IMG/VR virus record: IMGVR_UViG_3300030329_004647
Coordinates: 62,001-126,000 of that record
Strand: one strand, 5' to 3'
DNA: 64,000 nucleotides
The notes under the pieces are model-generated. The model worked only from the letters and a program-made list of their open reading frames with translations. It did no database searches and was not told the DNA's origin. Below, in pieces: positions 24,110 to 58,670 of the stretch. Made by a program: the position numbers and the translations under genes. How positions within the stretch are numbered: the stretch's first letter is position 1; every line of letters starts with the position of its first letter.

Positions 24110-24139
24110 TTAGAAAGTATTTATAAAAAAAGTGTAACT

Positions 24140-26836
24140 ATGCTTAACGAACAATATAATAGAATAAAATATCTCATGGGTTATGATACCTCAAAACCCT
24201 TAACAGAACAAGCAAAAATCTTAAACACTCTACTACTAACAGAAAGTGTAAATTTTGGTACCTTCCTTAAAGGTCCGATACAGGTAATGATAAGGGAATG
24301 GGTAGGAGGATTAATGGGTGCCTTTGAAAAAGAAGTAATAGAAAAAATGGCGAAAGAACTAGGTTCTTCAGAAGCTGTAATAAGAAATTCTTTACGTAAA
24401 GCTGCGGGAGACGCAACACTAAACCCAATGGATATAAAAGTCGTATTTACTTTCGCTAGAACAGCGGGACCTAGGACAGCGGGGTTAAAAGGATTTGAAC
24501 GAGGTGCACGAGAAGCTTTTAATGATATAAACCAAGTTTTTAAAACTGGAAATATGAATGTGGCAATGAAAGAAGCTTTGGAAGTATTAGAAAACACACT
24601 AGGAAAGGAAAATATGAACTGGATGGCAGGTGGAAGTGGAAAATGGAACGGCCACCCTATGAAAAAAATGTTAGATGAGTTTAGACAGAAAAAAATCAAT
24701 ACAGACCAAAAAGTCGACGTTGATGATGGTGGTGGTAACGTTAAACCAGATGTAGACGGTAAAGTTAAAACAGATGTAGACGGTAAAACAGTATACAAAC
24801 CATCACAACGAAAACCAAAAGATGTGTTTGAAGAAGAAACAGGTCTTAAGTGGAATGAAACCTTATCCTCAAGTGCAGAGGGAGTAAAGAATAAAGGAGG
24901 GTATAACAACTTAAATACTAGTTTAAATAAAGAATCAGCAAAAGTATCACAGGTAGCTGGTTCAGGTAAATTATGGGATATATTTAAACACTCACCAGGT
25001 AACCAAGGACTAACGAAGGGTGAGGTAAAAACTATTACTAATGGAACTAAAGGTTCCAACAACTATCTAAAACAAGTGATGGAAGAAGGGTTCCCACCAA
25101 CAAAGGCACCTTATGAGGGTTATACTGGTCCTTTAAGACAATGGAATGAGTCCACGAATAGTTGGGCTAAACCAGAATATTCATCATCAGATATAGTAAA
25201 TATGTTATCTAGAAGATGGCAACAAAAACAAATATCTAGTAATAGCTTTATACAAAGCATGAAGAACAAATGGACTAAAACCATTTCAAATTTTAAAAAC
25301 GCTTCTATTGGTGGTAAATTTAGACAAATAGTTGATACAGCTCTATTAGTATTTAACACAGCCATGTTAAAAACCAATCCTATTACCAAAGTAATAATGT
25401 ATGGATTAACATGGGGAGCTTTTAGAGGTCTTAATTCTAAAATACTCAAGGGAACAATTAAAATTAGAGCTAGATATGTGATAGCTGCATATAATGTTAT
25501 GAGTCTAGCTGGGGCGTTAGATGGGTTTGATAATCTACTCACAAATATTAAGGCTCTTTTAGATGATATACCAGGTAAACGTAAAGTTGCTTTTACTGAA
25601 AATTTATACTTAAATGTACTTACCCCTGATTTTTATAGTAAATTGGTAGGTCAGAAAAGTGAAATGGAGTCTATTGTTGGTACACCAGAAGAACACGCTG
25701 CTGTAGCAAAACAAATAGCGGAAATAATATATAACGGTTCACTTAATGGTGTAACATTTTTAACTGAAAACGGATTTACACTTAAAGATATAGGGGAGAG
25801 GATAGGAAACCAATGGCCTACAAACTGTACAGTAGCTTTTGCAAGTGGTGTAGCACACCAGTTTAAAAGAGAATGGCAAAGACTAGATGGTGAAGAAAGA
25901 GAAATGTACGACGTGTTTGAACAAGTTCAAAAATTAGAATGGTGGAAAGGTCAGTCGTCTGAATATGATAAGCAATTGTTGACTAAGCTTGGTGCTATAG
26001 ATTTTCCTAGTTGGGATGACCTTGCACCAACCATTAAAAACTGGGACCTTATTGGAACGGATGTAGATGAAATTTTAGTTACAGCACAAAACGCGTATCA
26101 AACAGGAGACATTACACAACAATTAGAAAATGAGTTAAAAAAGATTGCTGAAAATGAAAAAGTACAAATGACAGCTGATTATATACAAATATACGAAACT
26201 CTAATTAGGGATTACTATGGAATGTCGTTAGAACAAAGTGACGTGACTGAAGATGAATTTATACAGAGAAAAACCAACCAACAACAGGCCATTTTCAAAT
26301 TAAGAGAATTTTTATTTGGGCCTTATATAAATTTTGGTTTTCCACTAAAATCTGAAGAAACACCATATATGTTATTTTTACCAGCAACTTGGCAAACAAT
26401 ATCACAAGGAAAAGGAGGTAAAGAATTACAAACCGATGCTTTAGATAAAAACATACAAGTTACCAGAGTTACCGACAAACCTGATAAAATTACTTTAGGG
26501 TTAAGATTGAGTGCGAGTGCTAAGGTAAATAAAATGGACCATTTACAAAGAATAAATGATGCAAAAAATAAATTTATTGGTGGTGAAAGTTACTACGACA
26601 ACTTACCATCAAAAATACAAGGATATATTTTACCAGAATTAAAAAAAGAAACAGGATTAGACAATCCTTTATTATATTTAATGGCCGCTTTAGAATCTAC
26701 CTCAAGGGAAAAAAGAAACCCACGAAATAAAATACAATTTGAAAAAAGACGTGGATATATAATAACACCCAATCCAGTTATACCAACTCAAGTTGAAGAA
26801 TCTAAAATAATTGGTTTAGCAAAATTATTACAATAA
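24140..26836 (+). CDS. large hypothetical protein with class A leader, probable internal virion protein
   Basis: MLNEQYNRIKYLMGYDTSKPLTEQ...LLTES; TATTTATA at 24118-24125. Confidence 0.8.
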   Translation: MLNEQYNRIKYLMGYDTSKPLTEQAKILNTLLLTESVNFGTFLKGPIQVMIREWVGGLMGAFEKEVIEKMAKELGSSEAVIRNSLRKAAGDATLNPMDIKVVFTFARTAGPRTAGLKGFERGAREAFNDINQVFKTGNMNVAMKEALEVLENTLGKENMNWMAGGSGKWNGHPMKKMLDEFRQKKINTDQKVDVDDGGGNVKPDVDGKVKTDVDGKTVYKPSQRKPKDVFEEETGLKWNETLSSSAEGVKNKGGYNNLNTSLNKESAKVSQVAGSGKLWDIFKHSPGNQGLTKGEVKTITNGTKGSNNYLKQVMEEGFPPTKAPYEGYTGPLRQWNESTNSWAKPEYSSSDIVNMLSRRWQQKQISSNSFIQSMKNKWTKTISNFKNASIGGKFRQIVDTALLVFNTAMLKTNPITKVIMYGLTWGAFRGLNSKILKGTIKIRARYVIAAYNVMSLAGALDGFDNLLTNIKALLDDIPGKRKVAFTENLYLNVLTPDFYSKLVGQKSEMESIVGTPEEHAAVAKQIAEIIYNGSLNGVTFLTENGFTLKDIGERIGNQWPTNCTVAFASGVAHQFKREWQRLDGEEREMYDVFEQVQKLEWWKGQSSEYDKQLLTKLGAIDFPSWDDLAPTIKNWDLIGTDVDEILVTAQNAYQTGDITQQLENELKKIAENEKVQMTADYIQIYETLIRDYYGMSLEQSDVTEDEFIQRKTNQQQAIFKLREFLFGPYINFGFPLKSEETPYMLFLPATWQTISQGKGGKELQTDALDKNIQVTRVTDKPDKITLGLRLSASAKVNKMDHLQRINDAKNKFIGGESYYDNLPSKIQGYILPELKKETGLDNPLLYLMAALESTSREKRNPRNKIQFEKRRGYIITPNPVIPTQVEESKIIGLAKLLQ

Positions 26837-28089
26837 TGCAATTAGGATTAGTTAGAGTTTTATTAGAACAGACCACCGCAGAAACTTTATGTGAAAAATA
26901 TTGGGGTAACGCAGGTAGTAAAGTGGGTTCACAACCTACAGACTGTGGAAGTTATGATGATATTGCAGGAAGAACTTCTGATGAATTCTGGAACACAAAC
27001 GGTGTGGAAAACGATGACTCAAGAAAATTGTTTCAGGAGGAATACGATAAAATTATTCAAGCTAACGCTGAGGACAAAGAAAGTTGTATTAAAGTCTTAA
27101 CCTGGTTATGGAAAGAAGAGGGATTCCAAGGATGTCCATGGGATGGGTACCAAGGGACACAAGTAGATACTGACAATGATGAAGACCAAGGAGGTTGTCC
27201 AGGTAGAACCCTAGAGGATTATTTAAACGATGGGTATGTTGAACACCAAGATAGAGGAGATTTAGAGTGTTACGGCAAAAAAGGATGTTACAAACACATT
27301 TATAAAAAATTTGATGATAACGGTTGTGAAAGCAGTCTTATCGGAGCAAAAAAAATAAAACTTTATTATAACAACCCTAAATGTGCTTGTTCTGGAGAAA
27401 GTTCTGACGGAGACGGTTCTGACAAAAAAGACAAAAAGAAAAAAGTTGCATTACAAATAGATGGTAAAATAATATTATGTGGTAAAAATAATAAAAAATG
27501 TATTAACCCATTAGCGATGTATAGTGGAAAAATTGAAGAACCATTTTCACAACAACTAAACACCATTAAAGCAAAAGTAACGGACAAAATTACTCTTGGT
27601 AGTGATAGAGGATTTCCAAACAATCCGGGACAACTTTTAGGTGGAGCACCAGAAGGTGGAATACCTAAAGGAACTTTAAGTGCTGCCATGGCTTTAAGTC
27701 ACGTTCACCCAGAAACCAAAGGACAAGAAGATATAATTGTTAGAGTACAAAACACAGACCCTAAAGTAGAACCTATCACATTTAGAGTTTATAAGGTAAA
27801 CAATCTTCCAGCAGACATATACCCAATATGGCAAAGTTATGACAATTACTGTAAAGCTCAACAAAGAAATTTATTAGCTACTGGATGGGAAGCAACAACT
27901 GAAGAGGAAGATACTTTAGGACAATCAGAGGTATTAGTAAGAATGAAATGTCCTCAAAACGGTGTACCAGTATATTGGACACAAAACCCAACTAAGAAAA
28001 ACCTAGAACAAAAAGTACAAACAATACAAAATGACACAATCCAAAAAAGTGTCACCCCCAAAGCACTTAAAATACTACAAGGTAATTAA
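26836..28089 (+). CDS. Cys-rich hypothetical protein with short leader (GLVRVLLEQ)
   Basis: TAATG coupling to the upstream ORF. Confidence 0.75.
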   Translation: MQLGLVRVLLEQTTAETLCEKYWGNAGSKVGSQPTDCGSYDDIAGRTSDEFWNTNGVENDDSRKLFQEEYDKIIQANAEDKESCIKVLTWLWKEEGFQGCPWDGYQGTQVDTDNDEDQGGCPGRTLEDYLNDGYVEHQDRGDLECYGKKGCYKHIYKKFDDNGCESSLIGAKKIKLYYNNPKCACSGESSDGDGSDKKDKKKKVALQIDGKIILCGKNNKKCINPLAMYSGKIEEPFSQQLNTIKAKVTDKITLGSDRGFPNNPGQLLGGAPEGGIPKGTLSAAMALSHVHPETKGQEDIIVRVQNTDPKVEPITFRVYKVNNLPADIYPIWQSYDNYCKAQQRNLLATGWEATTEEEDTLGQSEVLVRMKCPQNGVPVYWTQNPTKKNLEQKVQTIQNDTIQKSVTPKALKILQGN

Positions 28090-28123: not shown

Positions 28124-28528
28124 TGGTGGAGGTGGGGGGTTTCGAACCCCCGTCTTGCTCATCTTCAAAAAATATCTATCCTACACGTTTAGTTTATTCT
28201 ACCTATTCGATTATTTCTACAGAATAAACAACCCTAAAAATAACCTAGACTATCTAATGTTTAACCACTCAAATAGCGAGAGTAGGATTGATTTGTGTAA
28301 ATGACATTTCATAATTAAAGGAACAAATCTTAAGACCCTTTAAAGAAATGGAACCATAGGATAACCTAGTTATGCTACAGTCACAGCTGACTCCTCACGG
28401 ACAAGTCCTAAAGTCGCCAACTTAGCAAGTGTTTTGCCAGTTAAAAAAATGAATCAGTTTTACAAGCTTAATTCAGGCTTGACGTGCTGATATCAATCGA
28501 CTGATGCCAATCAATTCCAGTCACCCCC
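28124..28528 (-). ncRNA. ssrA: tmRNA (405 nt)
   Basis: 5' GGGGGUGACUGGAAUUGA pairs with 3' CACCUCCACCA, with a G3-U alanine determinant and encoded CCA; T-arm GGGGGUUCGAAACCCCC; internal tag ORF at 28438-28370. Confidence 0.93.
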
Positions 28529-28796: not shown

Positions 28797-28812
28797 TATT
28801 TATTAAAAGAAT

Positions 28813-31800
28813 ATGATATCAAATTTACACAAAATAGAAAGAAAGATTAATGTTTTAAACTCTATATATGAGGATAAGAGCCCTTCCTATAGATTAAAAG
28901 TACTTCACAAGAATTTAAATTTAAGTTTAAAAGAATGTGGAGTAATACTAAAAGAATCATCATCCACTAACCCAGACTATACTTATTTTTACGAAAACTT
29001 AGAAAAAAAGTTTAAAAAAAATTCATATAAGAACATAAGAGATATAATTTTTAATTATTTAAATGGGTGGATAATAGAAGAAGATATATTTTGGGTTTTT
29101 TACGTTGATTCAGGTGACGACATATTTCTAGACCCAACAGACGGGCCTGATAAATTAACCATAGTTTATCTTTTAACACAAAAAATACAATCTATTTTCC
29201 CTATAAGTGAAGACGAAGCATTTGAGATATCAAATGATTTTATAGACTTTAAATTAAACGAAGAAAAAACTAAAAGACTAGTAGAACAAAATCAGAAAAA
29301 AATTAATCCACCAGTACAACCAGGAGACTATATTAGGGTTATAGAGATAGACCATGATATGTTTCCACCAAGTGAATACGAACAAAATTATATGCCACCT
29401 GAACATTTAGAATTAGGTGAAGTACAAGAAGTATACCAAGAGGAGAATCCAATAGATGGGTCAGAAGTCACAATGTTAAGAGTTTATTTTCCAAACCTGG
29501 AATTTGATAGTGAAGATGTTATGGGTGGTGGAGGTCTAGAAGGTGGATATGATGATGGAGTTAGAGTTTTAGTGTTACCTTATGACACCTATATTAAAAC
29601 AGATGAGGTATTAACCGAACACGGTATCATAGGTGATAATAAACCGAACAGACCTAGAATACCTGATATTTTAAGAAAAAATTTAATTAGAGCAAGATTT
29701 GAAAGACCTGGAGGTTGGGGAAGAAATAGCGAACTTTTTATTTTATACCTAACTCCAGTAGGTAAAATTATGGACATCCAATTCGGAAGTACAACAAACG
29801 CTTCAGTATCCCCATTCCAAATAAACCAACAAGTAAGTTTTGGTGATTTATATAAATTTGAACAAGACTCTCCCTTTGATTTAAGAATGTTCGGAAGACT
29901 AAGAGAACAAGACGAACAAATGAGTTTATTTCCTACCGGAGACTGGGAATTTACAGTTGGTTTTGAAGATTACGCACTAGAAAACGGAGAAATGATTGCG
30001 GGTTCGGACCAAGATACCGCTGATTGGATAAGAAAAACAGCACCAGAAAGACTAGTAGCAAAAATCTTTAAAATGTGGGATGCTGGTGGAATAGACTTCT
30101 CCAACCTTAAGTTATTAGGATTACCAACTAACAGTGCTTTAATTACTTTTCTATTAAAACGATATATTAGAAATACTAAAAAACCTATTCCAGTTTCTTA
30201 TACATTTGATTGTGATGATTTAAGTGACCTATTTGATAAAGATAGTAGAGATTATAATTTAGATTATATTAAACAATATCTTTGTGGTGATGATAGTTTT
30301 TGGGATACTGACCTGTGGTATGGTAATGAGTGGAGTGATTATATGTCAGATGATATAGATGAAACAAATTGGAAAATTATAAGTGAAATTTTTGGAGGGG
30401 CATCACCATCAGATGCTGAAGATATATTAAACAGAAGTTCTTCTAGTGAAGAGGTAGACGAGTTAATAGAAAAATACGATGAGGAAATAGATGATATTAG
30501 AAATTTTGTAACCCAATCACATGATACAGCTATGGAAGATGCTACTAAAAGTGCGATGGCAGCAGATATTAAAGAAAAAATATTAGACCATTTTGGTGGT
30601 GGTAGCCAACATGATGGAAAAATCCAAGGAAAGTTATTTAGAAATGATAATGGAAAATTTAATTATGTGATTGAAGGGGATTTAAGGGATTTAGTTAACG
30701 AGGTGTGGGATAATACAGAAGACGTTTTTCAATTCCACCCAGATTATTCTAACACCACACTAGAAGACGCTTTAATGGAAATGGATGGAAGAACAATGGT
30801 TTCATATGATTTAGACCAACATTTATTTAGATTATTAATGGAAGAAGAATTTAAATTTTGGGACTACTGTGAAGGAAGATTGGGGGATTGTTTAGAGGTT
30901 GATACTAAATTTTTTGATGGTTACTGGCACCCAAGTTACGACATTAATGAATATCTCATTGACCGACTATATGAATTAATACCAGGACCAATACAAGAAC
31001 AGACAGAGAGGTATTTACAAAAAAAAGGAGACCAATTAACCCGTAAAGTTGTAAAAGACATTTTACATATATTAAAAACAGAAAAAGTTTTAGACGACCT
31101 TTATATCTTACCAGACCACGTTTCTGGCGTAGATGGAGACGAGTATACTAGGGGAGACTTAGAGTTTAATGTTACCCTTCATATTCTACAAAACCCAAAT
31201 CAAGATAGAGCTTTTATGGTCGATGCAAACATGGGCGGAGATTTTGATGATGAAATCGAGGTAATCATTAGTTTAGGCCCAAAGTTTGGACAAGGAGATT
31301 ATGAACAAGTACAAGGATTTTTAAATGATTATGTTCGTCACGAAATAGAACATGTTATAGACGCGTTAGAAGGTAATGAAGTAGAAACACCACAAGGTTT
31401 AAGTCCATTTGAATACTACACACAACCACATGAAGTTAGAGCACAAAAAGCTGGATTTAAAAGAAGAGCAAAAATAGAAAAAAGACCAGTTGAGGATATT
31501 GTTAAGGATTATATAGAATATAGGCAAAGTATAGATAAATTGACTGATGATGAAAAAAATGCATTAGTAACCCAACTAACCGAACAAGAAAAAAAAAGTA
31601 GATTCAAAACCATATACGAAAATGATAATTGGAAATATGTATGGCCAATAGGGGACGAGTCCTTTTGTGAAATAGCAAAGGGTACTAAATGGTGTGGGGA
31701 ATGGACTAAAGACCAGAACTGGTACCAGTCTATAGGTAGTAGTGGAACTCATTATATTTTAATAGATAAAAAAACTGGTGAAAAGTATAGTCTTGTAGAC

Positions 31801-33093
31801 CAAGAAAAGGTACCTGGAATGCCTAGTTATAAAGTAAGAATTTATGATAAGGATAGAGAATTCCTTAGTACACATAGATTTTTAGCGGACAAACCAACAC
31901 TACATGAATTGTTCAATCAATCCTATACCATGTTAGATAAATTAAGATATAATGTAGAAATTCCAAAAGAGGACTTAGATAATTTTTATAAAGAAACGAT
32001 AGAGCAGGATGTCTACGGAAGAGGAGAGGGTCACGAGAGCGCTAAACTTTTAGAGCTGGTATATAAAATTATAAAAGACCCAACCTTTGAGGGTCTTAAA
32101 CAACAATTAGAAGAAAACTATAATGGTGGGTTGACCGTATTAACTGAGGGTGATGTCCCAGTAATTAATAGTATGATTGCTGGTAAACAGTTTTTAAGTA
32201 TCTATCTTCCCGATGAGGATTTTAAGTCAGAGTGGATGAATATAGGTGATGATGATGATTATTATTTTGATTTAGCTGTAGACCGCTATTATAGTGAGGA
32301 CCATTGTGAAGAGATGGAGGAAGATGAAATTGCGTATATAGGGAGTTACATGAACAAAGAAAATATAAAAAAATTAAATAACCTTTCTGAAATTATTGGT
32401 GAACCAATAGGAGACTGGAGACAGGAATCTGAAATAGATGAGTATCTAACCAAATACTTTACCAAAGATTGGAACGACTATATATGGAGAATTGTGGAAC
32501 AGATTGGGTGTGCGGTAGGAAGAAACCGAGTTAAGGATATAAGAAAATTAGTGAAAGAGGGGTTACTTTTAGACGTGGATTATGTTGGTGCTAGAAACTA
32601 CGCAATGTGGAGAATAGATATAACATATCCTGAATTATTATACCTTGTAGGGATATATGGTGTGGATAATATAAAACAATTAGAAGACCATTCCATAAAT
32701 GACCTAGATGTAAATTTATATGACGCGTGGTGGGATAGTTGGTCTCTCGAAGGTGGTGAAGAAGATATTAATTGGGAAATGGGCAGATTCTTAGATAATG
32801 TAATGGAAGAATACGGTGATGACCTTAAAACTCTAGGTGAGAATGAAGAAAAATTTATGGAAACGATAAATAACTTAGGATTTACAAAACCCTATAGAGA
32901 ATGGCAACTAAAACAAGATGTTGAGGGAAGCAGTTACCAAAGGTCAATAATAATAAAAGATTGGGATTTAAAGAGTGGTAAAATACACATCCAGATACAA
33001 GAAAATGATGAACAAGGAAGATGGCAAACAAAACAACACCAAACCACTATTGATGAATTACCAACCTATGTTAATCAACACCAACTATTTTAA
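28813..33093 (+). CDS. 1426-aa multi-module protein (putative polyprotein) including an HExxH zincin-like module
   Basis: VRHEIEHVID...PHEVRA; a YENDNWKYVWP...GTKWC module; modules punctuated by LVEQ/LTEH/LREQ/IQEQ/LTEQ. Confidence 0.75.
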   Translation: MISNLHKIERKINVLNSIYEDKSPSYRLKVLHKNLNLSLKECGVILKESSSTNPDYTYFYENLEKKFKKNSYKNIRDIIFNYLNGWIIEEDIFWVFYVDSGDDIFLDPTDGPDKLTIVYLLTQKIQSIFPISEDEAFEISNDFIDFKLNEEKTKRLVEQNQKKINPPVQPGDYIRVIEIDHDMFPPSEYEQNYMPPEHLELGEVQEVYQEENPIDGSEVTMLRVYFPNLEFDSEDVMGGGGLEGGYDDGVRVLVLPYDTYIKTDEVLTEHGIIGDNKPNRPRIPDILRKNLIRARFERPGGWGRNSELFILYLTPVGKIMDIQFGSTTNASVSPFQINQQVSFGDLYKFEQDSPFDLRMFGRLREQDEQMSLFPTGDWEFTVGFEDYALENGEMIAGSDQDTADWIRKTAPERLVAKIFKMWDAGGIDFSNLKLLGLPTNSALITFLLKRYIRNTKKPIPVSYTFDCDDLSDLFDKDSRDYNLDYIKQYLCGDDSFWDTDLWYGNEWSDYMSDDIDETNWKIISEIFGGASPSDAEDILNRSSSSEEVDELIEKYDEEIDDIRNFVTQSHDTAMEDATKSAMAADIKEKILDHFGGGSQHDGKIQGKLFRNDNGKFNYVIEGDLRDLVNEVWDNTEDVFQFHPDYSNTTLEDALMEMDGRTMVSYDLDQHLFRLLMEEEFKFWDYCEGRLGDCLEVDTKFFDGYWHPSYDINEYLIDRLYELIPGPIQEQTERYLQKKGDQLTRKVVKDILHILKTEKVLDDLYILPDHVSGVDGDEYTRGDLEFNVTLHILQNPNQDRAFMVDANMGGDFDDEIEVIISLGPKFGQGDYEQVQGFLNDYVRHEIEHVIDALEGNEVETPQGLSPFEYYTQPHEVRAQKAGFKRRAKIEKRPVEDIVKDYIEYRQSIDKLTDDEKNALVTQLTEQEKKSRFKTIYENDNWKYVWPIGDESFCEIAKGTKWCGEWTKDQNWYQSIGSSGTHYILIDKKTGEKYSLVDQEKVPGMPSYKVRIYDKDREFLSTHRFLADKPTLHELFNQSYTMLDKLRYNVEIPKEDLDNFYKETIEQDVYGRGEGHESAKLLELVYKIIKDPTFEGLKQQLEENYNGGLTVLTEGDVPVINSMIAGKQFLSIYLPDEDFKSEWMNIGDDDDYYFDLAVDRYYSEDHCEEMEEDEIAYIGSYMNKENIKKLNNLSEIIGEPIGDWRQESEIDEYLTKYFTKDWNDYIWRIVEQIGCAVGRNRVKDIRKLVKEGLLLDVDYVGARNYAMWRIDITYPELLYLVGIYGVDNIKQLEDHSINDLDVNLYDAWWDSWSLEGGEEDINWEMGRFLDNVMEEYGDDLKTLGENEEKFMETINNLGFTKPYREWQLKQDVEGSSYQRSIIIKDWDLKSGKIHIQIQENDEQGRWQTKQHQTTIDELPTYVNQHQLF

Positions 33094-33909
33094 TCAATTA
33101 AGTAAACTCCAAGTAGTAGGTTTATGTTTATAACTGTACTTATTTTCTCCTAATATATTTAAAAGTCTTTCACCTAACTTTATAGCGTTCTCCACATCCT
33201 CGACAACTACATATTCATAATTAGAGTGCCAGCCATAATAACCCGCTGCAAAATTTAAACAACTAAAATCAAACATTTCTTTTAATACCATAGTATCCGT
33301 ATACGGGTGATTTAACCAGTCAGTAATTCCATGTTCTAATATAATATCTTTACACTTTTCGATAAAGTCACCATCTTCCTTATACAACTTTACACCCATT
33401 AAGGTTTTACTCATAGTATTATTTTCAGTAGAATCAAACTGTATAGCGTATCCTACATCTTTAAAAAATTCTTTATCCGCTTGTCTGGTTCCTTGACAAC
33501 CTGTTTCTTCAGCGACTGGAAAAAACACTTTAACATTATCTAATTTGTCTAATAACTCTAAACAAATAAAAACCCCAGCTTTGTCATCACCCCCTATACC
33601 ACATCTATTACCATCATTATCGGAATACGCAACTAAAGATAGTTTTTTTTCGTCTTGAGCATTTAAATGATACTCCTCTTTTACAGTATAGTCTTGGATT
33701 TCATGCACACTATCCAAATGAGCCACCAAACACGGAAAATGTTTAGCATTACCCTTAGTCACATAAATCGAACCAAGCTTATCTATCTTATAGGAATAAC
33801 CCTTTTTATCTAAAATACCTGTAACATATTCTATTAATAAGTCTTCTTCCCAAGTATAGGTAGGTACTGATAAAATATTTTTAAGTTTTTTTATTGTTTT
33901 TTTATTCAT
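33094..33909 (-). CDS. M20/M28/M42-clan zinc peptidase
   Basis: AHLDSVH, GGDDKAG, AEETGC, IQFD and YHS-like C-terminal His motif. Confidence 0.85.
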   Translation of the reverse strand: MNKKTIKKLKNILSVPTYTWEEDLLIEYVTGILDKKGYSYKIDKLGSIYVTKGNAKHFPCLVAHLDSVHEIQDYTVKEEYHLNAQDEKKLSLVAYSDNDGNRCGIGGDDKAGVFICLELLDKLDNVKVFFPVAEETGCQGTRQADKEFFKDVGYAIQFDSTENNTMSKTLMGVKLYKEDGDFIEKCKDIILEHGITDWLNHPYTDTMVLKEMFDFSCLNFAAGYYGWHSNYEYVVVEDVENAIKLGERLLNILGENKYSYKHKPTTWSLLN

Positions 33910-33913
33910 ACTA

Positions 33914-33945
33914 CAAAGATAAATAAAAATTTTAATATAAACAAA
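33914..33945 (-). promoter_or_regulatory. Bacteroidota sigma-A-type promoter (likely leaderless)
   Basis: TTTG, N20, TATCTTTG, TAGT, ATG. Confidence 0.8.
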
Positions 33946-33970
33946 TTATATTTATAATAAAACCTTTAAA

Positions 33971-34777
33971 ATGAAATTTATGATTAAAGAAGAGATAAAT
34001 AGAATTAAAAATTTAATGTTAGTTAATGAAGAAAATGAGATGGGTCAATATATGGATTCCACATATCTTAAAACATCCGAACAAGCAGGGATAGGAGATG
34101 AAGAAACAGAAGTAATTGTATTTAACACAATTAAAGATGCTATAGAACATAATATGAAATTAGTGATGTTAAGACCAGAATATGTTGAAGTAGCTCGTAA
34201 CCTTATAGATAGTGAAGGAGCAAATGTTTTAGTGGGTACGGTTATAGATTTTCCATATGGGAACGGTAGTGTAACTGATAAAGTACAAGAAGCTAAACAA
34301 GCTGTAAATAATGGAGCAGATGAATTAGATTTTGTAATAGATTATAGAGCTTATTTAAGAGGAAATGTAGAAAAAGTTAGTAGAGAGATTAAAGAAGGTT
34401 CTGAAATTGGATTAAAAAATGGAAAAACAGTAAAATGGATTTTAGAGACTGCAGCCTTAACTGAAGACCAAATAGGGGAATTAACTTCTATAATTAGAGA
34501 TGTGATTATTGACAATTTTGGTGAAGGTGAAGCCGCAAATGTTTTTGTAAAAACATCTACAGGATTTTTTACACCAGAAGGGGGTGGTCCTGGAGGAGCT
34601 ACTGAAGAAGCGGTATCTATTATGACAAATAACGCAGGTCCCTTAAAGGTTAAAGCATCTGGTGGTATTTATAGTCAGGACGATTTGAAAAAAATGGTGG
34701 GAGCTGGAGCAAGTCGTATAGGTACTTCAGCAGCTAAAGAAATAATGTTAGGTCAAAAAACAGAAAAGGATTATTAA
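33971..34777 (+). CDS. deoC: deoxyribose-phosphate aldolase with class A leader
   Basis: MDSTYLK, VGTVIDFPYG, GADELDFVI, KWILET, FVKTSTG (Schiff-base Lys), KASGGI, RIGTS. Confidence 0.93.
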   Translation: MKFMIKEEINRIKNLMLVNEENEMGQYMDSTYLKTSEQAGIGDEETEVIVFNTIKDAIEHNMKLVMLRPEYVEVARNLIDSEGANVLVGTVIDFPYGNGSVTDKVQEAKQAVNNGADELDFVIDYRAYLRGNVEKVSREIKEGSEIGLKNGKTVKWILETAALTEDQIGELTSIIRDVIIDNFGEGEAANVFVKTSTGFFTPEGGGPGGATEEAVSIMTNNAGPLKVKASGGIYSQDDLKKMVGAGASRIGTSAAKEIMLGQKTEKDY

Positions 34778-35664
34778 TGAAAAAGATAATTAAAAAAATA
34801 TTAAAAGAAGAGGTGGTAGATGTCACCCTATTCCAAGACGAAATATTCGACTTACCCCTAGAACAAAGAAAAGCTGTAATGAGTGGTTTGGAGGAGTTAT
34901 TGAAAAATAAAAATAATGATTCCGACTTACAAGAACAAATTTCTTACAAAGGTATTCCTGAAATAAAAGCTACAACCACATTTGGTAAAATTTTAAAATG
35001 GTTAAAAAGGTATATAACAGATAAAGCGACTAACTTTTTAATCAACGCCTCTATGAGTGAGGTTAAGGACACTATACAAATGTTAAAAGTTTTAGACCCT
35101 ACCGATATGCAAGGACTATTCAAACCAAAAGCAATGTATTTAGGAGGGGGGATTGATTTTGCTGAGGACGGAGCATCTTGGAGAACTAGAGTAGAGGAGT
35201 TCTATGGTCCAGACCATGTAGTTAAGGATGAACGACTACGTACATTAGTAACAACAGGAAAATTAAATTTTGGTGGTATAAAATATCCAGCTTTATTGAA
35301 TCCATTAAGAGCTGAAACGGTAAGAGCCGAAGACCCAACATTCCAGGAAATGTTTAAAAAATGGAAGGCAAATGAATTAAATGATGAAGACATGATTATA
35401 TTCCAGGAAAAAGTTAGAGAACAAATCGTACACCAAGATTTATATATGTTACAAGTTTGTGATACTAATCTAATTAGTTTTGATGGGACAGCGGGAGCTG
35501 GAACATTCGGTGAAGCTCAAATATCCGCCTTAAAAAATCAACAAGTTTTTATATGGTTAAATAAAGGTATGAAAATGTCTAATATTTCTCCTTGGTTATT
35601 TCCATCTATTACTAAAATATTAAAGGACGATGAACTATGGCCTTTCTTAAAACGACTAGGTTAA
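34777..35664 (+). CDS. nucleoside 2-deoxyribosyltransferase / dNMP N-glycosidase-like protein with N-terminal leader
   Basis: MYLGGGIDF...SWR, LNP, DLYMLQVCD, GAGTFGE pattern. Confidence 0.7.
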   Translation: MKKIIKKILKEEVVDVTLFQDEIFDLPLEQRKAVMSGLEELLKNKNNDSDLQEQISYKGIPEIKATTTFGKILKWLKRYITDKATNFLINASMSEVKDTIQMLKVLDPTDMQGLFKPKAMYLGGGIDFAEDGASWRTRVEEFYGPDHVVKDERLRTLVTTGKLNFGGIKYPALLNPLRAETVRAEDPTFQEMFKKWKANELNDEDMIIFQEKVREQIVHQDLYMLQVCDTNLISFDGTAGAGTFGEAQISALKNQQVFIWLNKGMKMSNISPWLFPSITKILKDDELWPFLKRLG

Positions 35665-36622: not shown

Positions 36623-36626
36623 ACTA

Positions 36627-36657
36627 CAAAGATAATAAAAAAGTTTGTAGTATCAAA
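36627..36657 (-). promoter_or_regulatory. Bacteroidota sigma-A-type promoter (likely leaderless)
   Basis: TTTG, N19, TATCTTTG, TAGT, ATG. Confidence 0.8.
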
Positions 36658-36674
36658 ATATATAGGTATAAATT

Positions 36675-38699: not shown

Positions 38700-38823
38700 A
38701 TATTTTTACTTTTTAATTGTTATAAATTTAATTAAATCTGCCTAATAAATCAATACTGACTATATGACATGGTGAAACTTGAATGTTATGACAAAATGTC
38801 TTATCATTGTTATAATACTATGT

Positions 38824-54570: not shown

Positions 54571-54601
54571 TTGCCCAAAGTATTTATTGAAAAAGAATTA
54601 T

Positions 54602-55303
54602 ATGAAGATTTTAGGACCCAAAGATATTGGCCACGGATTATTAATAGAATATGATGCTGGACATCTCTCACCACAAGACAATGTTAAAGTAATTAAAGAG
54701 ATGAAAAACTCTGAGTTTTCTGATGAAGTGTATATGTATTGTATCTTACAAAAATATGGAACACCAAATAGAAACGGGAGAGTATACCCAAAAAGAATAT
54801 TAGAAAGAGAAAATGATAGATACCAAGACGTTATTAAAAGAGGAAGTGCTATTTCCGAACTAAACCACCCAGAATCTTCACTAATTGATTTAGAAAGAAC
54901 TTCTCATGTTATCACAGAAACTTTTTGGGATGGTAACAAACTAATGGGAAGACTAAAATTGTTAACAACTCCAGGATACCACCAAAAAGGAATAGTATCA
55001 TCTATGGGGGATATCGCAGCTAATTTATTAAGACAAGGAATCACTTTAGGTATTTCATCTAGAGGAGTTGGTTCACTAAAGAAAAGCGGAGAACACAATG
55101 AGGTACAAGATGATTTTGAATTGATATGTTTTGACCTTGTTTCATCACCATCTACACCAGGCTCTTATCTATTTAAAGACATGAGTGAAGTTGATAATTA
55201 TGATGAAGTATTAGAGACCGTAAAAGAAAAAGATTCATTCGACTCAAAAATAGATAGGTCGCTTTCTCTAATGGATAGATTAGATAACTTTCTTAATCAT
55301 TAA
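54602..55303 (+). CDS. prohead core protease (T4 gp21-like)
   Basis: NRNGRVYP, ELNHP (catalytic His), GISSRGVG (catalytic Ser), DLVSSPS; ATG 54602 preferred over the track's TTG 54587. Confidence 0.93.
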   Translation: MKILGPKDIGHGLLIEYDAGHLSPQDNVKVIKEMKNSEFSDEVYMYCILQKYGTPNRNGRVYPKRILERENDRYQDVIKRGSAISELNHPESSLIDLERTSHVITETFWDGNKLMGRLKLLTTPGYHQKGIVSSMGDIAANLLRQGITLGISSRGVGSLKKSGEHNEVQDDFELICFDLVSSPSTPGSYLFKDMSEVDNYDEVLETVKEKDSFDSKIDRSLSLMDRLDNFLNH

Positions 55304-56837: not shown

Positions 56838-58670
56838 ATGGGAGCATTATTAGAATCCGGAATGGTTGGTAACATTGGGTTAAAACACCTAAAAGTTATC
56901 AAAGAGGATACAATTAATAAATGGGACAAATTAGGTTTCCTTGATGGCCTTAAAGGTCATGGAAGAGAAAACATTGCTCAGCTTTTTGAAAATCAGGCAA
57001 CTCATTTAATCAATGAGGCGACTGCAGCTGACAACTCAGGTTCTTTCGAAACTGTAGTTTTCCCTATTATTAGAAGAGTATTCTCAAAATTATTAGCTAA
57101 CGAAATCGTATCTGTACAGGCAATGAACTTACCAATTGGTAAATTATTCTACTTCGTACCAAAAGTATCAAGTAGAGTTGGTGAGGGTGGTATGTATGAA
57201 GGTTTCGCTCCATTTGGAGCACCAGGTGCACCGGCAACACAAACGCCAAGTTCACCTACATCAGCTACAACAATAAACTTATATGACAACTTCTACGCAA
57301 CTAACGCACCAATGGGTGCTGAAGATGGTCTTTATGACATCTCAAAAGGTTCGTACTCAGGTTATATCACAACTAATCTACAAGTTATGGACTGGAACGC
57401 TTCAGCTCGTACTTTAGGTTATGCTGCGACTAACTCTACAACTGTAACGTCATTAACATCAACAACTGATTGTTTAAAATCTGTGATTATTGGAGTTACT
57501 GGATTCCAGTCAACAGGTGAAGGTAAATTAATCGGACCGATGGGTAACGAAATAGATACTGAAGATTTCTTATCTTCTTTAACTTTAATTACTGAAAACG
57601 CTACAACTTGTAAGTCAGGTTCAACTAACTATAACGCTGGTGACAACATGTTATTCAGAGTTGTTACTCAAAAATACGGTAGGTCAATTGCGAACCCAAC
57701 AAGTTCGAAAACATCTACAGCTTTCCCTGGTGGAGACTTTGACAGTATTTGTGATGTAACAGGTACAATTTACTTAGAGGCTGACCTTTCGTGTCCAGCT
57801 TGTATTAATTGTGACTCTGTAGACGGATATGTTTGTTCATACTACGCAAATCGTGAGTTCCAAAATGAAACATCACCATTTAGTGCAGCGTGGAGAGTTT
57901 ACAAAGACCTAGAATTTGAAGAAAAAATGGGTGAAGTTTCTTTCGACCTTGAATCTGTTACAGTTTCGGTTACTGAAAGAAAATTAAGAGCTCAATGGTC
58001 ACCAGAGCTTGCACAAGACGTGTCAGCATTCCATAATATCGACGCTGAAGCTGAGTTAACTGCTTTACTTTCTGAAGAAGTTGCTGCTGAAATCGATAGA
58101 GAAATCTTAAGAGACCTTAGAAAAGGAGCAGCTTGGGATTTAAGATGGGATTACAATGGATGGAAGAGATTCCAATCAGGTCAAGCACCATATACTCAAA
58201 AAGACTGGAATCAAACGTTAATCACTGCGGTTAACCAAATTTCAGCTCAGATTCACAAATCTACATTGAGAGGTGGAGCTAACTGGATTGTTTGTTCTTC
58301 TGAGGTATCTGCAATATTTGATGACTTGGAGTACTTCCACGTGTCAAATGCAGCACCAGACCAAGACCAATACAACATGGGTATTGAAAAAGTTGGAACT
58401 CTAGGAGGTAGATATACTGTATATAGAGACCCTTATTTCCCACCTAACCAATTATTACTTGGTCACAAGGGAACGTCATTACTTGACACAGGGTATGTTT
58501 ACGCACCGTATGTACCGTTACAATTAACACCAACAATGTATAATCCATTTAACTTTACACCAATCAAGGGTATCATGACTAGATACGCTAAGAAAATGGT
58601 TAACAACCGTTTCTATGGTAGAGTTACTATCGATGGAGTTAAAACATTCGATGTTAAAGAGTTAAGATAA
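56838..58670 (+). CDS. major capsid protein (T4 gp23-like)
   Basis: IVSVQAMNLP, RKLRAQWSPELAQD, EIDREILRDL, YAPYVPL, GIMTRY. Confidence 0.96.
   Translation: MGALLESGMVGNIGLKHLKVIKEDTINKWDKLGFLDGLKGHGRENIAQLFENQATHLINEATAADNSGSFETVVFPIIRRVFSKLLANEIVSVQAMNLPIGKLFYFVPKVSSRVGEGGMYEGFAPFGAPGAPATQTPSSPTSATTINLYDNFYATNAPMGAEDGLYDISKGSYSGYITTNLQVMDWNASARTLGYAATNSTTVTSLTSTTDCLKSVIIGVTGFQSTGEGKLIGPMGNEIDTEDFLSSLTLITENATTCKSGSTNYNAGDNMLFRVVTQKYGRSIANPTSSKTSTAFPGGDFDSICDVTGTIYLEADLSCPACINCDSVDGYVCSYYANREFQNETSPFSAAWRVYKDLEFEEKMGEVSFDLESVTVSVTERKLRAQWSPELAQDVSAFHNIDAEAELTALLSEEVAAEIDREILRDLRKGAAWDLRWDYNGWKRFQSGQAPYTQKDWNQTLITAVNQISAQIHKSTLRGGANWIVCSSEVSAIFDDLEYFHVSNAAPDQDQYNMGIEKVGTLGGRYTVYRDPYFPPNQLLLGHKGTSLLDTGYVYAPYVPLQLTPTMYNPFNFTPIKGIMTRYAKKMVNNRFYGRVTIDGVKTFDVKELR

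What the first reader, a model, noticed from the sequence alone, without database searches (positions are those of the whole stretch)
28813..33093. 1426-aa ORF looks like a protease-processed polyprotein
Seen in sequence: compositionally distinct modules are separated by leader-type sites: LKES (28948), LNEE/LVEQ (29254/29278), LTEH (29611), LREQ (29899), IQEQ (30991), LTEQ (31576). The IQEQ-LTEQ interval holds exactly one HEIEH...E zincin-like domain. The next module starts with a YENDNWKYVWP...GTKWC domain. Inference: several cargo proteins are made as one chain and released by the gp21-like protease inside the head.
Basis: partly seen in the sequence, partly recalled or inferred. Interest (0 to 1): 0.7.

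Follow-up and report, generated by a model that had tools for sequence, protein, structure and literature searches.

The report
Phage head cargo polyprotein candidate
A 1426-residue protein of an uncultured T4-like jumbo phage is a string of six independent modules, and every junction carries the short motif that T4-type head proteases cut, so it is probably made as one chain and cut into several virion-delivered proteins, although no cleavage has been measured.

Summary
The motif [LI]xE is common here (33 copies against 22 expected), so the list was a selection. Independent evidence supports five of the seven sites: LVE158, LTE269, LRE365, IQE729 and LTE924.

- Homology with 22 mosaic relatives breaks at exactly these points.
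- A [LIV]xE is kept at each junction whichever modules flank it.
- Four of the five sites lie in pLDDT<50 linkers of AlphaFold models. LTE924 sits at the end of the zincin domain's last helix.

LKES46 and LNEE148 are not supported. The likelier first site is IYE20, at the end of an N-terminal leader shared with at least eight other proteins of this phage.

The genome is a 232-kb T4-like virus record with a gp21-type protease, a gp23-type capsid protein and Bacteroidota-type early promoters.

Modules: leader plus helical M1, Tudor/SH3-like M2, beta-rich M3, alpha/beta M4, gluzincin M5 (invariant HExxH-x26-E), and M6 with a possibly PcfJ-like start. M4, M5 and M6 also occur alone, usually behind a 4-30-residue leader ending in [LI]xE.

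Cleavage and packaging are inferred, not shown. I rate it a new variant of the T4 capsid-targeting and gp21 system.

The parts
28813..33093 (+). Whole ORF, 1426 aa (P0001): candidate cargo polyprotein.
   Evidence: An identical protein cluster with 20 member sequences, and homologs continuous across the same junctions from independent ENA/JGI/Logan assemblies, argue against an assembly fusion.
28797..28804 (+). TATTTATT promoter-like motif 9 nt upstream of the ATG. It has the same class and spacing as the motifs upstream of the portal, terminase, scaffold and other + strand genes.
   Evidence: 24 of 27 TATAAATA hits are on the - strand, i.e. TATTTATA on the + strand, mostly just upstream of + strand ORFs. 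Late-promoter function is inferred.
28813..28872 (+). N-terminal leader, aa 1-20 (MISNLHKIERKINVLNSIYE). Candidate capsid-targeting-like propeptide ending in IYE20|D.
   Evidence: It aligns with the leaders of at least 8 other ORFs of this genome and of homologs P0003, P0007 and P0012. The leader core NR[IVL][RK] occurs 8 times in N-termini against 0.45 expected (p=2.6e-8). For P0001 itself the similarity is weak, so this site is inferred.
28873..29286 (+). Module M1, aa 21-158, mostly helical, ending in LVE158|Q.
   Evidence: AlphaFold model: H24-35, H39-49, H54-86, small sheet, H111-128, H133-159. The pLDDT<50 segment 151-163 covers the site. Homologs have LNE|[HEQ] or LME|E at the same spacing, 5 residues before (L/I)NPxVxPGD.
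29287..29619 (+). Module M2, aa 159-269. Tudor/SH3/KOW-like beta-barrel, ending in LTE269|H.
   Evidence: VIA-align gives Z 5-6 over model residues 163-265 to Tudor domains of PcrA/UvrD, CarD and NusG-KOW. ESM Atlas rows hit PcrA_UvrD_tudor/DUF3553. The LTE site is kept in 17/17 homologs and lies in pLDDT<50 segment 266-281.
29620..29907 (+). Module M3, aa 270-365, small beta-rich domain, ending in LRE365|Q.
   Evidence: strands 292-298, 307-313, 318-324, 356-360. In P0018-P0023 this module sits hundreds of residues away from M4, and in P0018 it lies after M4. It still ends in [LI]RE. LRE is kept in 24/24 homologs.
29908..30999 (+). Module M4, aa 366-729, alpha/beta domain of unknown function, followed by a Pro/Thr/Glu-rich linker ending in IQE729|Q.
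   Evidence: It occurs without M1-M3 in P0026 (starts MFPTGQW), P0174 (30-aa leader ...NLSE|QDNQ) and P0176 (MENPTETIKE|NQ). No fold or family match.
31000..31584 (+). Module M5, aa 730-924. Zincin-like (gluzincin) metallopeptidase domain with HEIEH 843-847 and E874, ending in LTE924|Q.
   Evidence: H843, E844, H847 and E874 are invariant in 46 sequences (A3). Recurrent weak Pfam hits to metallopeptidase families: DUF6782 11/46, eCIS_core 7, Peptidase_M91 5, PhageMetallopep 4, M78 1. Weak fold matches to BepA, thermolysin and aminopeptidase N, Z 4.2-4.9. pLDDT is above 90. The module is precisely absent in P0010-P0014 and replaced by a ~90-aa module in P0003, P0007, P0008 and P0015.
31339..31353 (+). 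HEIEH zinc-binding/catalytic motif of M5. The third ligand candidate E874 is at 31432-31434.
31585..33090 (+). Module M6, aa 925-1426. N-terminal YENDNWKY...GTKWC beta domain (931-1036, possibly PcfJ-like), a helical middle part, and a C-terminal alpha/beta domain (1354-1426).
   Evidence: Model at pLDDT ~90. Stand-alone homologs of 415-600 aa start MNNLNE|Q, MSINILNE|Q, MNNLTE|I or MKSLTE|I. BFVD fold hits include 'structural protein' of phages PA5oct and Serratia BF and a 'PcfJ-like protein'. The PcfJ link is weak. Two paralogous domains lie elsewhere in the genome.
54587..55303 (+). gp21-type prohead serine protease, the presumed processing enzyme. It has GLLIE near its own N-terminus.
   Evidence: Peptidase_S77, 88.8 bits against a cut-off of 27. 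N-terminal sequence. It lies in a T4-like head module: terminase 49023, portal 50805, scaffold-like 55402, capsid protein 56838.
57009..57017 (+). INE58-60|A61 in the gp23-like major capsid protein (56838-58670). Candidate propeptide cleavage site showing the same motif in a canonical substrate.
   Evidence: sequence THLINEATAADN. Its function as a cleavage site is inferred by analogy with T4 gp23.

Best explanation
The ORF encodes a virion cargo polyprotein of a T4-like jumbo phage that probably infects Bacteroidota.

Shown:
- The chain consists of an N-terminal leader and six autonomously folding modules: helical M1, Tudor/SH3-like M2, beta-rich M3, alpha/beta M4, gluzincin M5, and M6 with a possibly PcfJ-like start.
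- The modules are joined by short, mostly disordered linkers.
- Every linker carries a conserved [LIV]-x-E followed mostly by Q, E or H.
- Relatives shuffle, delete, replace and reorder the modules exactly at these points.
- Solo versions of M4, M5 and M6 usually carry a short N-terminal peptide ending in the same motif.

Inferred:
- The leader brings the whole chain into the scaffolding core of the prohead, as the T4 capsid-targeting sequence does.
- The gp21-type protease (window 54587-55303) then cuts after E20, E158, E269, E365, E729 and E924.
- The pieces that remain in the head are ejected with the DNA and act in the host at the start of infection.
- The gluzincin M5, with its intact HExxH...E site, is the most likely enzymatic effector.
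For: 1. T4-like head machinery is present. Peptidase_S77 protease, Gp23 capsid protein, T4 portal and terminase are all found.

2. Homology breakpoints fall on the motif. In 22 mosaic homologs they fall at query 267, 362-366, 726-730 and 919-922. Across all hits, 125 of 147 internal breakpoints lie within 8 residues of a [LIV]xE, against 51.6 expected (p~1e-35).

3. The motif is kept whatever modules flank it. Examples: PVQE|QQSIWG, PLNE|QEQR, QINE|EEQK, SLQE|QTSD, GIIE|EHTT, QINE|QDNQ. Its distance to the domain core varies from 7 to 14 residues upstream of M5. That fits a linker signal rather than a fixed structural element.

4. Structure predictions agree. pLDDT<50 linkers at 151-163, 266-281, 365-374 and 723-735 hold four sites. 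LTE924 lies where solo M5 proteins end. pTM is low relative to pLDDT (0.63 against 89.5; 0.45 against 72), which fits independent beads on a string.

5. Solo M5 and M6 proteins begin with 4-20-residue leaders ending in the motif. Examples: MIKESLVME|S, MNLSE|G, MNNLNE|Q, MKSLTE|I. T4 propeptides are 7-65 residues long (PMC9026906).

6. A shared N-terminal leader class exists in at least 8 other ORFs of this genome (p=2.6e-8). Carriers include a VanY-type cell-wall peptidase. The same leaders occur in the syntenic relative L008.

7. The ORF has the same TATTTAT[AT] upstream motif as the head genes.

8. gp21-family proteases cut C-terminal to Glu after a short motif (PMC5694885).
Against: - There is no direct evidence that the protein is in virions or is cleaved. 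The phage is uncultured.
- The gene lies 17 kb from the head module, among chaperone and protease genes (DnaK-like, ClpB-like, SprT-like, M42-like).
- [LI]xE is common, and several equally conserved copies lie inside folded domains: IDE517, LIE553, LYE721. Conservation alone does not mark a site.
- LTE924 is modelled inside a continuous helix 912-930, with pLDDT dipping only to 77.
- The query's own N-terminus has lost the LLE6 and xxE27 sites of its relatives, and its resemblance to the leader family is weak.
- A few solo M5 proteins (P0067, P0070, P0168) have no leader or site.
- Fold hits to 'structural proteins' of PA5oct and Serratia BF are weak and have no sequence support.
Confidence: 0.6

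Rival explanations
1. It is processed in the head, but M1-M4 act as a long multi-cleaved targeting or scaffolding propeptide. That propeptide is chopped up and expelled, as in the giant phages SPN3US and phiKZ. Only the C-terminal part (M5 and/or M6) remains as cargo.
For: In SPN3US, apart from the protease's own self-cleavage, all identified prohead-protease cleavages produce N-terminal propeptides. Long propeptides there are removed by multiple cuts (PMC10052503; PMC5694885). M1-M4 have no recognisable enzymatic function. M5 and M6 are the variable, cassette-like parts at this locus.
Against: M2, M3 and M4 are well-folded conserved domains of 100-360 residues, not low-complexity peptides. 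M4 exists on its own, or with M6, behind its own short leader (P0174, P0176, P0026). The syntenic relative L008 has M1-M4 plus only a ~90-aa module, so M1-M4 cannot be merely a carrier for M5 and M6.
Confidence: 0.15
2. It is an uncleaved multidomain 'polyvalent' protein. The conserved [LIV]xE at module starts would be a structural or interaction element, such as a helix cap or chaperone-binding element. It would act intact, in the virion or in the cytoplasm.
For: Cleavage is unproven. Some polyvalent proteins of conjugative plasmids are transferred full length (PMC5512222). LTE924 is modelled in a helix. The gene sits beside chaperone genes. The leader also occurs on a DeoC-like aldolase, an odd head cargo.
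Against: The same tripeptide occurs before four or more unrelated folds and at the N-termini of their solo versions. Its spacing to the domain core is variable, and it sits in variable-length Pro/Thr/Glu-rich linkers. WG-repeat proteins carrying the same YEDxxW...GTxWC domain lack it, so it is not part of that fold. The motif equals the known specificity class of the protease family this genome encodes.
Confidence: 0.13
3. The chain is cut at these junctions by the zincin module M5, in cis or in trans from paralogs, and not by the gp21-like protease. This is what was proposed for metallopeptidase domains of polyvalent proteins.
For: Iyer et al. predict autoprocessing of polyvalent proteins by embedded zincin-like domains (PMC5512222). 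Nearly every M5-family protein has [LIV]xE directly upstream of the domain. The HExxH...E residues are invariant, so the domain is probably active.
Against: P0010-P0014, P0003, P0007-P0009 and P0018-P0023 lack M5 yet keep all junction motifs. The capsid protein and a scaffold-like protein rich in these sites carry the same motif. Cutting after Glu at hydrophobic-x-Glu is the documented habit of gp21-family proteases.
Confidence: 0.08

Closest known systems
T4 internal proteins IPI/IPII/IPIII and Alt: a capsid-targeting sequence (CTS) removed by the gp21 prohead protease
   Same: A gp21-family protease is encoded in the genome. Short N-terminal leaders end in hydrophobic-x-Glu. Diverse, fast-evolving cargo sits behind a conserved leader. 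The genes lie outside the head module. Injected effector roles are expected (PMC9026906, PMC3012670).
   Different: T4 cargo proteins are single proteins with one N-terminal cut (Alt also has a C-terminal cut). Here up to six folded modules are concatenated with a site at every junction, and relatives recombine the modules. The leader (~20-27 aa, core ExxNR[IVL][RK]xL) shows no obvious resemblance to the T4 CTS as I recall its sequence; the two were not aligned here.
Polyvalent proteins of phages and conjugative elements (Iyer, Burroughs, Anand, de Souza, Aravind 2017; PMC5512222)
   Same: Large multi-domain polypeptides combine several presumed effector domains. A zincin-like metallopeptidase is a frequent component. 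Delivery with the DNA and processing into pieces are both predicted.
   Different: None of the Pfam families matched at E<=1 is a hallmark polyvalent-protein domain. Processing is predicted here to be done by the head protease at a defined linker motif, and it persists in relatives that lack the zincin.
Ejection and inner-body proteins of giant phages phiKZ, 201phi2-1 and SPN3US, processed by gp21-like proteases (gp175, gp245)
   Same: These are jumbo phages with many head-internal proteins. A diverged gp21 homolog cuts after Glu at a 3-residue motif. Single precursors carry multiple cuts.
   Different: Their motif is (S/A/G)-x-E rather than (L/I/V)-x-E. The described cuts trim and degrade N-terminal propeptides; they do not separate folded, independently occurring domains.
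Polyproteins of RNA viruses and retroviruses (for example Gag-Pol), as a functional analogy only
   Same: One translation product is targeted as a unit into the assembling particle. A virion protease then cuts it at short linker motifs into several mature proteins.
   Different: There is no homology. This is a dsDNA tailed phage. The products are accessory cargo and not core structural or replicative proteins.
Small gluzincins such as ImmA/IrrE (Peptidase_M78) and phage or eCIS-associated metallopeptidase families (DUF6782, eCIS_core/DUF4157, PhageMetallopep), compared with module M5
   Same: HExxH plus a Glu 26 residues after the second His. The domain is small, about 190 aa. Weak recurrent HMM hits were found. 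The comparison of spacing with IrrE rests on my own knowledge.
   Different: No member reaches a Pfam gathering threshold. Fold matches are only Z 4-5. M5 forms its own large family, with 443 representatives at E<=0.001 for the M5+M6 query, most of the listed hits being to M5.

Membership tests
Substrate of a T4-type (gp21, Peptidase_S77) prohead protease | A gp21-family protease is encoded by the same phage. | tested here: met
   PF03420 at 88.8 bits (cut-off 27) at window 54587-55303, next to scaffold-like and Gp23 genes.
Substrate of a T4-type (gp21, Peptidase_S77) prohead protease | Hydrophobic(L/I)-x-Glu motif at accessible positions. | tested here: met
   Five junction sites are conserved and sit at mosaic breakpoints. 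Four lie in pLDDT<50 linkers.
Substrate of a T4-type (gp21, Peptidase_S77) prohead protease | Actual cleavage after the Glu in proheads. | not testable with these tools
   This needs virion N-terminomics or an in-vitro protease assay.
T4-like CTS-bearing internal (ejected) head protein | A conserved N-terminal targeting peptide shared by otherwise unrelated proteins and ending in the cleavage motif. | tested here: inconclusive
   A leader class is clear in at least 8 other ORFs (p=2.6e-8). P0001 and its homologs align to it only loosely.
T4-like CTS-bearing internal (ejected) head protein | Presence inside mature heads and ejection into the host. | not testable with these tools
   The phage is uncultured. 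Only weak fold resemblance of M6 to annotated 'structural proteins' of PA5oct and Serratia BF, with no sequence match.
Polyvalent proteins (Iyer et al. 2017) | Two or more distinct effector-type domains in one polypeptide of a phage or plasmid. | tested here: met
   Six modules, separable in homologs.
Polyvalent proteins (Iyer et al. 2017) | Hallmark domains of the class: MuF, ArdC-N, ParB/DdrB, SNF2, ART, or MPTase of the polyvalent clades. | tested here: not met
   No such Pfam domain at E<=1. M5 members give only sub-threshold hits to other metallopeptidase families.
Zincin / gluzincin metallopeptidase (module M5) | HExxH plus a downstream Glu ligand, conserved across the family. | tested here: met
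   H843, E844, H847 and E874 are invariant in 46 sequences.
Zincin / gluzincin metallopeptidase (module M5) | Zincin fold: mixed sheet plus an active-site helix and a Glu helix. | tested here: inconclusive
   Only Z 4.2-4.9 to BepA, thermolysin and aminopeptidase N when searched as part of a 727-residue model. Foldseek against the PDB found nothing.
PcfJ-like domain (PF14284), N-terminal domain of M6 | Significant match to the family profile. | tested here: inconclusive
   1 of 30 domain members hits PF14284, at E=0.1. The language-model neighbour cluster is 35% PcfJ at score 0.82. A BFVD 'PcfJ-like protein' hit has E=9.7e-3.
Tudor/SH3-like barrel (module M2) | Five-stranded small barrel superposable on Tudor/KOW domains. 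| tested here: inconclusive
   Many concordant matches cover 163-265 at Z 5-6, rmsd 2-3 A, plus Atlas rows. These are below the level at which the tool's notes allow a firm call.

The most novel reading that the evidence does not exclude
A lineage of T4-like jumbo phages of Bacteroidota loads its heads with combinatorial cargo polyproteins. These are strings of interchangeable effector cassettes, each preceded by a prohead-protease site. One targeting leader imports a whole set of proteins, which the head protease then separates for injection. Evolution swaps cassettes at the cleavage linkers. The same phage would also have a previously undescribed capsid-targeting leader (core ExxNR[IVL][RK]xL ... 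[LI]xE) on at least eight further proteins, including a cell-wall peptidase.
Probability: 0.45. Interest if true: 0.8.

Novelty: new variant of a known kind. Interest (0 to 1): 0.68.

Why it matters
Tailed phages are known to inject a few proteins with their DNA, and in T4 each is a separate gene with its own targeting peptide. A polyprotein whose modules are separated by head-protease sites would be a different design.

- Several effectors would be packaged in fixed 1:1 stoichiometry through a single targeting event.
- New effectors could be gained simply by recombination at the linkers.
- It would give a sequence-only rule for finding injected proteins in uncultured T4-like jumbo phages: a leader or linker with [LI]xE in front of an autonomous domain.
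- It points to a very large uncharacterised family of small gluzincins, hundreds of 50%-identity clusters, as candidate injected proteases.
- It suggests natural leaders and linkers that could be used to load foreign proteins into phage heads of Bacteroidota phages.

The hypothesis is directly testable with a recombinant protease and with virion mass spectrometry on cultured relatives such as Flavobacterium phage immuto.

Tried and rejected
- **Pfam and PHROGs on the whole protein:** nothing.
- **megablast against phages:** nothing. tblastn found only the M5-like C-terminus of Flavobacterium phage immuto gp182.
- **Foldseek against PDB for aa 700-1426:** nothing significant. BFVD for aa 1-760: nothing significant. 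AFDB clusters and ESM Atlas returned only unnamed viral or metagenomic relatives of M5.
- **Profile search of M5 against PDB sequences:** only E>0.1.
- **Language-model search of M4:** no usable hit.
- **Profile of M6 against the PA5oct and immuto genomes:** no match. The BFVD 'structural protein' resemblance stays a weak fold-level lead.
- **Searching the rest of the L008 contig:** the record is not held.
- **Stand-alone M2/M3 and M4 genes:** most short hits (P0175, P0177-P0188) start or end inside modules. One such pair was checked and lies on a 3x-coverage contig with a fragmented gene (L016). I judged these hits to be frameshift or truncation artefacts, not real solo genes. Only P0174, P0176 and P0026 were kept.
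- **Complex prediction of the protease with the LRE365 linker peptide:** 'no answer'. This is evidence neither for nor against.
- **LKES46 as the leader site:** rejected. It is helical and unconserved.
- **Adjacent M42-like peptidase, SprT-like or ClpB-like genes as the processing enzymes:** considered only, not tested. The three minus-strand ones I examined carry host-type promoter motifs and no specificity argument links them to the motif.

Full report
**1. What is in the sequence**

The window is bases 62001-126000 of a 232-kb linear IMG/VR virus record, with completeness estimated at 72%. The ORF at 28813-33093 (+) is uninterrupted and encodes 1426 residues (P0001). HEIEH is at residues 843-847, YENDNWKYVWP at 935-945 and GTKWC at 957-961.

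[LI]xE is not rare here. There are 33 copies against about 22 expected from composition. The list of seven was therefore a selection and needed independent tests. The tighter pattern [LI]xEQ occurs five times against 1.1 expected from the rest of the genome (p=0.005). Four of those five are junction sites.

**2. The phage**

The genome has a T4-type head module inside the window:
- terminase at 49023-50765
- T4-type portal at 50805-52640
- Peptidase_S77 (gp21-type) protease at 54587-55303
- a 473-aa acidic scaffold-like protein at 55402-56823
- a Gp23-family capsid protein at 56838-58670

The capsid protein has ...HLINE|ATAADN... at residues 56-66, and the protease has GLLIE near its N-terminus. 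For comparison, T4 gp21 has LIE-9 and T4 propeptides are 7-65 residues long (PMC9026906). gp21-family proteases cut C-terminal to Glu after a short motif (PMC5694885). That the T4 motif is L/I-x-E is my own knowledge. It agrees with the statement that residues 8 and 10 of the IPIII capsid-targeting sequence govern processing.

Several minus-strand genes carry TTATTATCTTTGTAGT directly before the ATG. This is a Bacteroidota-type TAnnTTTG -7 element (classification from my own knowledge). Many plus-strand genes, including the head genes and this ORF, carry TATTTAT[AT] 8-40 nt upstream. The closest cultured hit for part of the protein is a Flavobacterium phage. The host is therefore probably a member of the Bacteroidota, and the ORF probably shares the expression class of the head genes. 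Both points are inferences.

**3. Modularity shown by relatives**

A word-indexed search found 22 relatives of 827-2094 aa. Their similarity to P0001 is piecewise.
- P0010-P0014 match residues 1-726 and then 921-1424 with nothing between. The zincin module is therefore precisely absent.
- P0003, P0007, P0008 and P0015 have a different ~90-aa module (QSIWGNGVMDREKEWCEDD...) in its place.
- P0005, P0009 and P0016 stop after that replacement module.
- P0004, P0006 and P0017 have a different 335-aa N-terminus followed by 722-1426.
- P0018-P0023 carry 267-365 and 362-726 hundreds of residues apart. In P0018 they are in the reverse order.
- P0026 starts at residue 373 (MFPTGQW...) and joins 373-728 directly to 921-1426.

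The breakpoints therefore fall at about 267, 362-366, 726-730 and 919-922, which are LTE269, LRE365, IQE729 and LTE924.

A syntenic relative (L008) has an 827-aa version at the same locus, with the same flanking genes. The C-terminal modules are thus optional cassettes.

An exhaustive HMMER search with residues 700-1426 found 443 representatives at E<=0.001.
- Module 730-924 occurs alone (~190 aa), at the C-terminus of ~320-aa proteins, and at the C-terminus of larger ones.
- Module 925-1426 occurs alone (415-600 aa).
- The YENDNWKY domain also occurs repeated in WG-repeat proteins.

**4. The motif at the junctions**

Whatever modules meet, a [LIV]xE is kept in the linker. Examples are PVQE|QQSIWG, AIEE|QQTLWG, PLHE|QQ, VLTE|QEKK, LIKE|EKDK, QINE|EEQK, PLNE|QEQR, SLQE|QTSD, NLHE|DDSD and GIIE|EHTT. 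Others are QINE|QDNQ before M4 and [LI]RE| after M3 in the shuffled giants.

LTE269 is kept in 17/17 aligned sequences and LRE365 in 24/24. LVE158 corresponds to LNE|[HEQ] or LME|E of the relatives at identical spacing from the following (L/I)NPxVxPGD. MAFFT misplaced a gap there.

Over all hits, 125 of 147 internal homology breakpoints lie within 8 residues of such a motif, against 51.6 expected (p~1e-35).

Upstream of the zincin domain the motif lies 7-14 residues from the first conserved helix, depending on the subfamily. WG-repeat proteins with the same YEDxxW...GTxWC domain lack it. It therefore behaves as a linker signal, not as part of a fold.

Solo proteins mostly begin with short peptides ending in the motif:
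- MIKESLVME|S, MNLSE|G, MSQDFLFE|S and MKNIKYFSELITE|G for the zincin
- MNNLNE|Q, MSINILNE|Q, MNNLTE|I, MKSLTE|I and MPQIFE|Q for module 925-1426
- MNNKKIQE|Q and MKTNTTHTLTE|Q for the giants
- ...NLSE|QDNQ for P0174

A minority (P0067, P0070, P0168) have none.

**5. Structure**

Two AlphaFold2 runs with alignments covered the chain.

Residues 700-1426 gave mean pLDDT 89.5 and pTM 0.63.
- The only low-confidence stretches are 700-707 and 723-729, the latter being the IQE site.
- LTE924 lies in a helix 912-930 where the 10-residue pLDDT mean dips to 77. This is exactly where solo zincin proteins end.

Residues 1-760 gave mean pLDDT 72 and pTM 0.45.
- The pLDDT<50 segments are 66-73, 151-163, 231-246, 266-281, 365-374, 385-398 and 726-735.
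- These contain or abut LVE158, LTE269, LRE365 and IQE729.

LKES46 lies in helix 39-49, and LNEE148 lies inside helix 133-159. Neither is well conserved: 0/12 and 3/12.

Other conserved [LIV]xE copies (IDE517, VDE550, LIE553, LYE721) lie in folded helices of M4. I do not regard them as sites.

**6. The modules**

- M1 (21-158) is helical.
- M2 (159-269) matches Tudor/KOW/SH3-like barrels over 163-265 at Z 5-6. Matches include the PcrA/UvrD C-terminal Tudor domain, CarD and NusG (Atlas). A role in binding host RNA polymerase would be pure speculation.
- M3 (270-365) is a small beta-rich domain.
- M4 (366-729) is alpha/beta with no match.
- M5 (730-924) has invariant H843, E844, H847 and E874 in 46 sequences. 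Its members give recurrent sub-threshold hits to metallopeptidase families: DUF6782, eCIS_core, Peptidase_M91, PhageMetallopep and M78. It also has weak fold matches to BepA, thermolysin and aminopeptidase N. I call it a small gluzincin that is probably active.
- M6 (925-1426) has three parts: an N-terminal beta domain that may be PcfJ-like (inconclusive), a helical middle, and a C-terminal alpha/beta domain (1354-1426) with only generic matches.

BFVD fold hits to 'structural protein' of the jumbo phages PA5oct and Serratia BF have no sequence support.

**7. A leader family**

Looking for the same pattern elsewhere in the genome revealed a shared N-terminal leader on at least eight plus-strand ORFs. 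It has the form M-x(2-6)-[LI]-x-E-x-x-N-R-[IVL]-[RK]-x-[LI]..., followed within 11-27 residues by [LIV]xE|[QSE].

The ORFs are:
- genome 51752 (287 aa)
- window 3699 (532 aa)
- window 5871 (149 aa)
- window 8008 (197 aa, VanY-type peptidoglycan peptidase)
- window 24140 (898 aa)
- window 33971 (268 aa, DeoC-like)
- window 58721 (868 aa)
- window 61945 (419 aa)

NR[IVL][RK] occurs 8 times in the first 30 residues of ORFs against 0.45 expected (p=2.6e-8). The relative L008 has equivalent leaders on the orthologous genes.

The N-termini of P0001 and its homologs align to this class:
- MISNLHKIERKINVLNSIYE|D (P0001)
- MSTLLEKLRKKTQTVLMVTKDESLCE|Q (P0007)
- MKFMIKEEINRIKNLMLVNE|E (leader-family ORF at window 33971)

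This is the organisation known from T4 internal proteins, a conserved targeting peptide on diverse cargo (PMC3012670; PMC9026906). For P0001 it suggests that the first cut is after E20 rather than at LKES46. The assignment for P0001 itself is weak.

**8. Mechanism proposed**

Shown: a beads-on-a-string protein with a conserved hydrophobic-x-Glu at each linker, in a phage with a gp21-type protease.

Inferred: leader-mediated incorporation into the prohead core, cleavage by the protease at E20, E158, E269, E365, E729 and E924, and retention and ejection of some or all products.

Rivals, detailed in their own section:
- The N-terminal modules are a multi-cut propeptide that is expelled, as in SPN3US.
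- The protein is an uncleaved polyvalent protein.
- Processing is done by the zincin module itself, as proposed for polyvalent proteins.

The third rival is weakened because relatives without the zincin keep every site.

**9. Comparison and novelty**

The nearest known system is the T4 capsid-targeting sequence plus gp21 system. In my searches of the held library I found no description of head cargo made as a multi-module polyprotein with protease sites at domain junctions.
- The giant-phage literature describes N-terminal propeptide trimming.
- The polyvalent-protein paper predicts zincin autoprocessing.

I therefore rate this a new variant of a known kind. The main weakness is the total absence of protein-level data.

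A complex prediction of protease with a linker peptide gave no answer and counts for nothing either way.

Noticed in passing
window 28124-28528 (-): A complete phage-encoded tmRNA gene (Rfam RF00023, 107.9 bits; ARAGORN tag peptide GKTLAKLATLGLVREESAVTVA*) lies in the 720-bp gap directly upstream of the polyprotein ORF.
   Followed up: partly
window 3699, 5871, 8008, 24140, 33971, 58721 (probable start 58760), 61945; genome C1:51752: At least eight + strand ORFs share an N-terminal leader with core ExxNR[IVL][RK]xL, followed by [LIV]xE|[QSE] at residues 11-27. The motif occurs 8 times against 0.45 expected (p=2.6e-8). Carriers include a VanY-type peptidoglycan peptidase (8008-8601) and a DeoC-like aldolase (33971-34777). 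This is a candidate capsid-targeting leader family.
   Followed up: partly
window 24140-28089 (+) and 40970-43648 (+): The large unknown proteins just upstream begin MLNE|QYNRIKYLMGYDTSKPLTE|Q (898 aa) and MQLGLVRVLLE|Q (417 aa). The 892-aa protein at 40970 has ILLE|QEQE at residues 50-53 and a hydrophobic, probably membrane-spanning stretch around residues 350-420. These may be further protease substrates or ejection proteins.
   Followed up: no
window-wide; e.g. 24118-24125, 33949-33956, 49011-49018, 55354-55361 (+ genes); upstream of 33909, 36622, 61851, 63785 (- genes): There are two promoter-like classes. TATTTAT[AT] lies 8-40 nt upstream of most + strand genes, including the head genes (24 of 27 TATAAATA matches are on the - strand). 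TTATTATCTTTGTAGT lies directly before the ATG of several - strand genes. The second is a Bacteroidota sigma-A type -7 element, which suggests the host phylum and near-leaderless early genes.
   Followed up: partly
window 33094-40897: A proteostasis gene cluster lies next to the ORF: M42/M20-like peptidase (33094-33909, -), SprT-like zinc protease (35661-36161, -), ClpB/ClpA-like double AAA+ protein (36675-38699, -) and a full-length Hsp70/DnaK (39041-40897, +). The order is conserved in the relative L008. In another relative (L009) the homologous gene is followed by ribosomal protein S21 and ClpP genes.
   Followed up: partly
genome C1:17049-18845 and C1:18836-20386 (outside the window; L002, L003): Two adjacent paralogs carry the same [YF]E[ND]DxW...CxxxxGTKWC domain in their middle. 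They have related N-termini (MNLFENIKILLKEDRV..., MKGLDKILLEGRVED...). One has a long acidic low-complexity tail.
   Followed up: no
L011:781-3504 (Flavobacterium phage vB_FspM_immuto_3-5A, gp182, P0173): This 907-aa protein of a cultured phage is annotated as NMN adenylyltransferase. By eye it contains a GDLD nucleotidyltransferase-like motif, a GGFKPPHLAHF (HxGH-type) adenylyltransferase motif and two HExxH modules. The last HExxH module is homologous to M5 and is preceded by VMAE|GRYD. That phage also has a gp21-type protease. It is a possible experimentally tractable polyprotein of the same kind.
   Followed up: partly
L016 (ENA contig ctg15334_3x_l): The homologous gene is split there into fragments of 72-367 aa that do not respect module borders. 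This is most likely due to frameshift errors in a 3x-coverage assembly. It is a caution against reading short database 'homologs' as stand-alone modules.
   Followed up: yes
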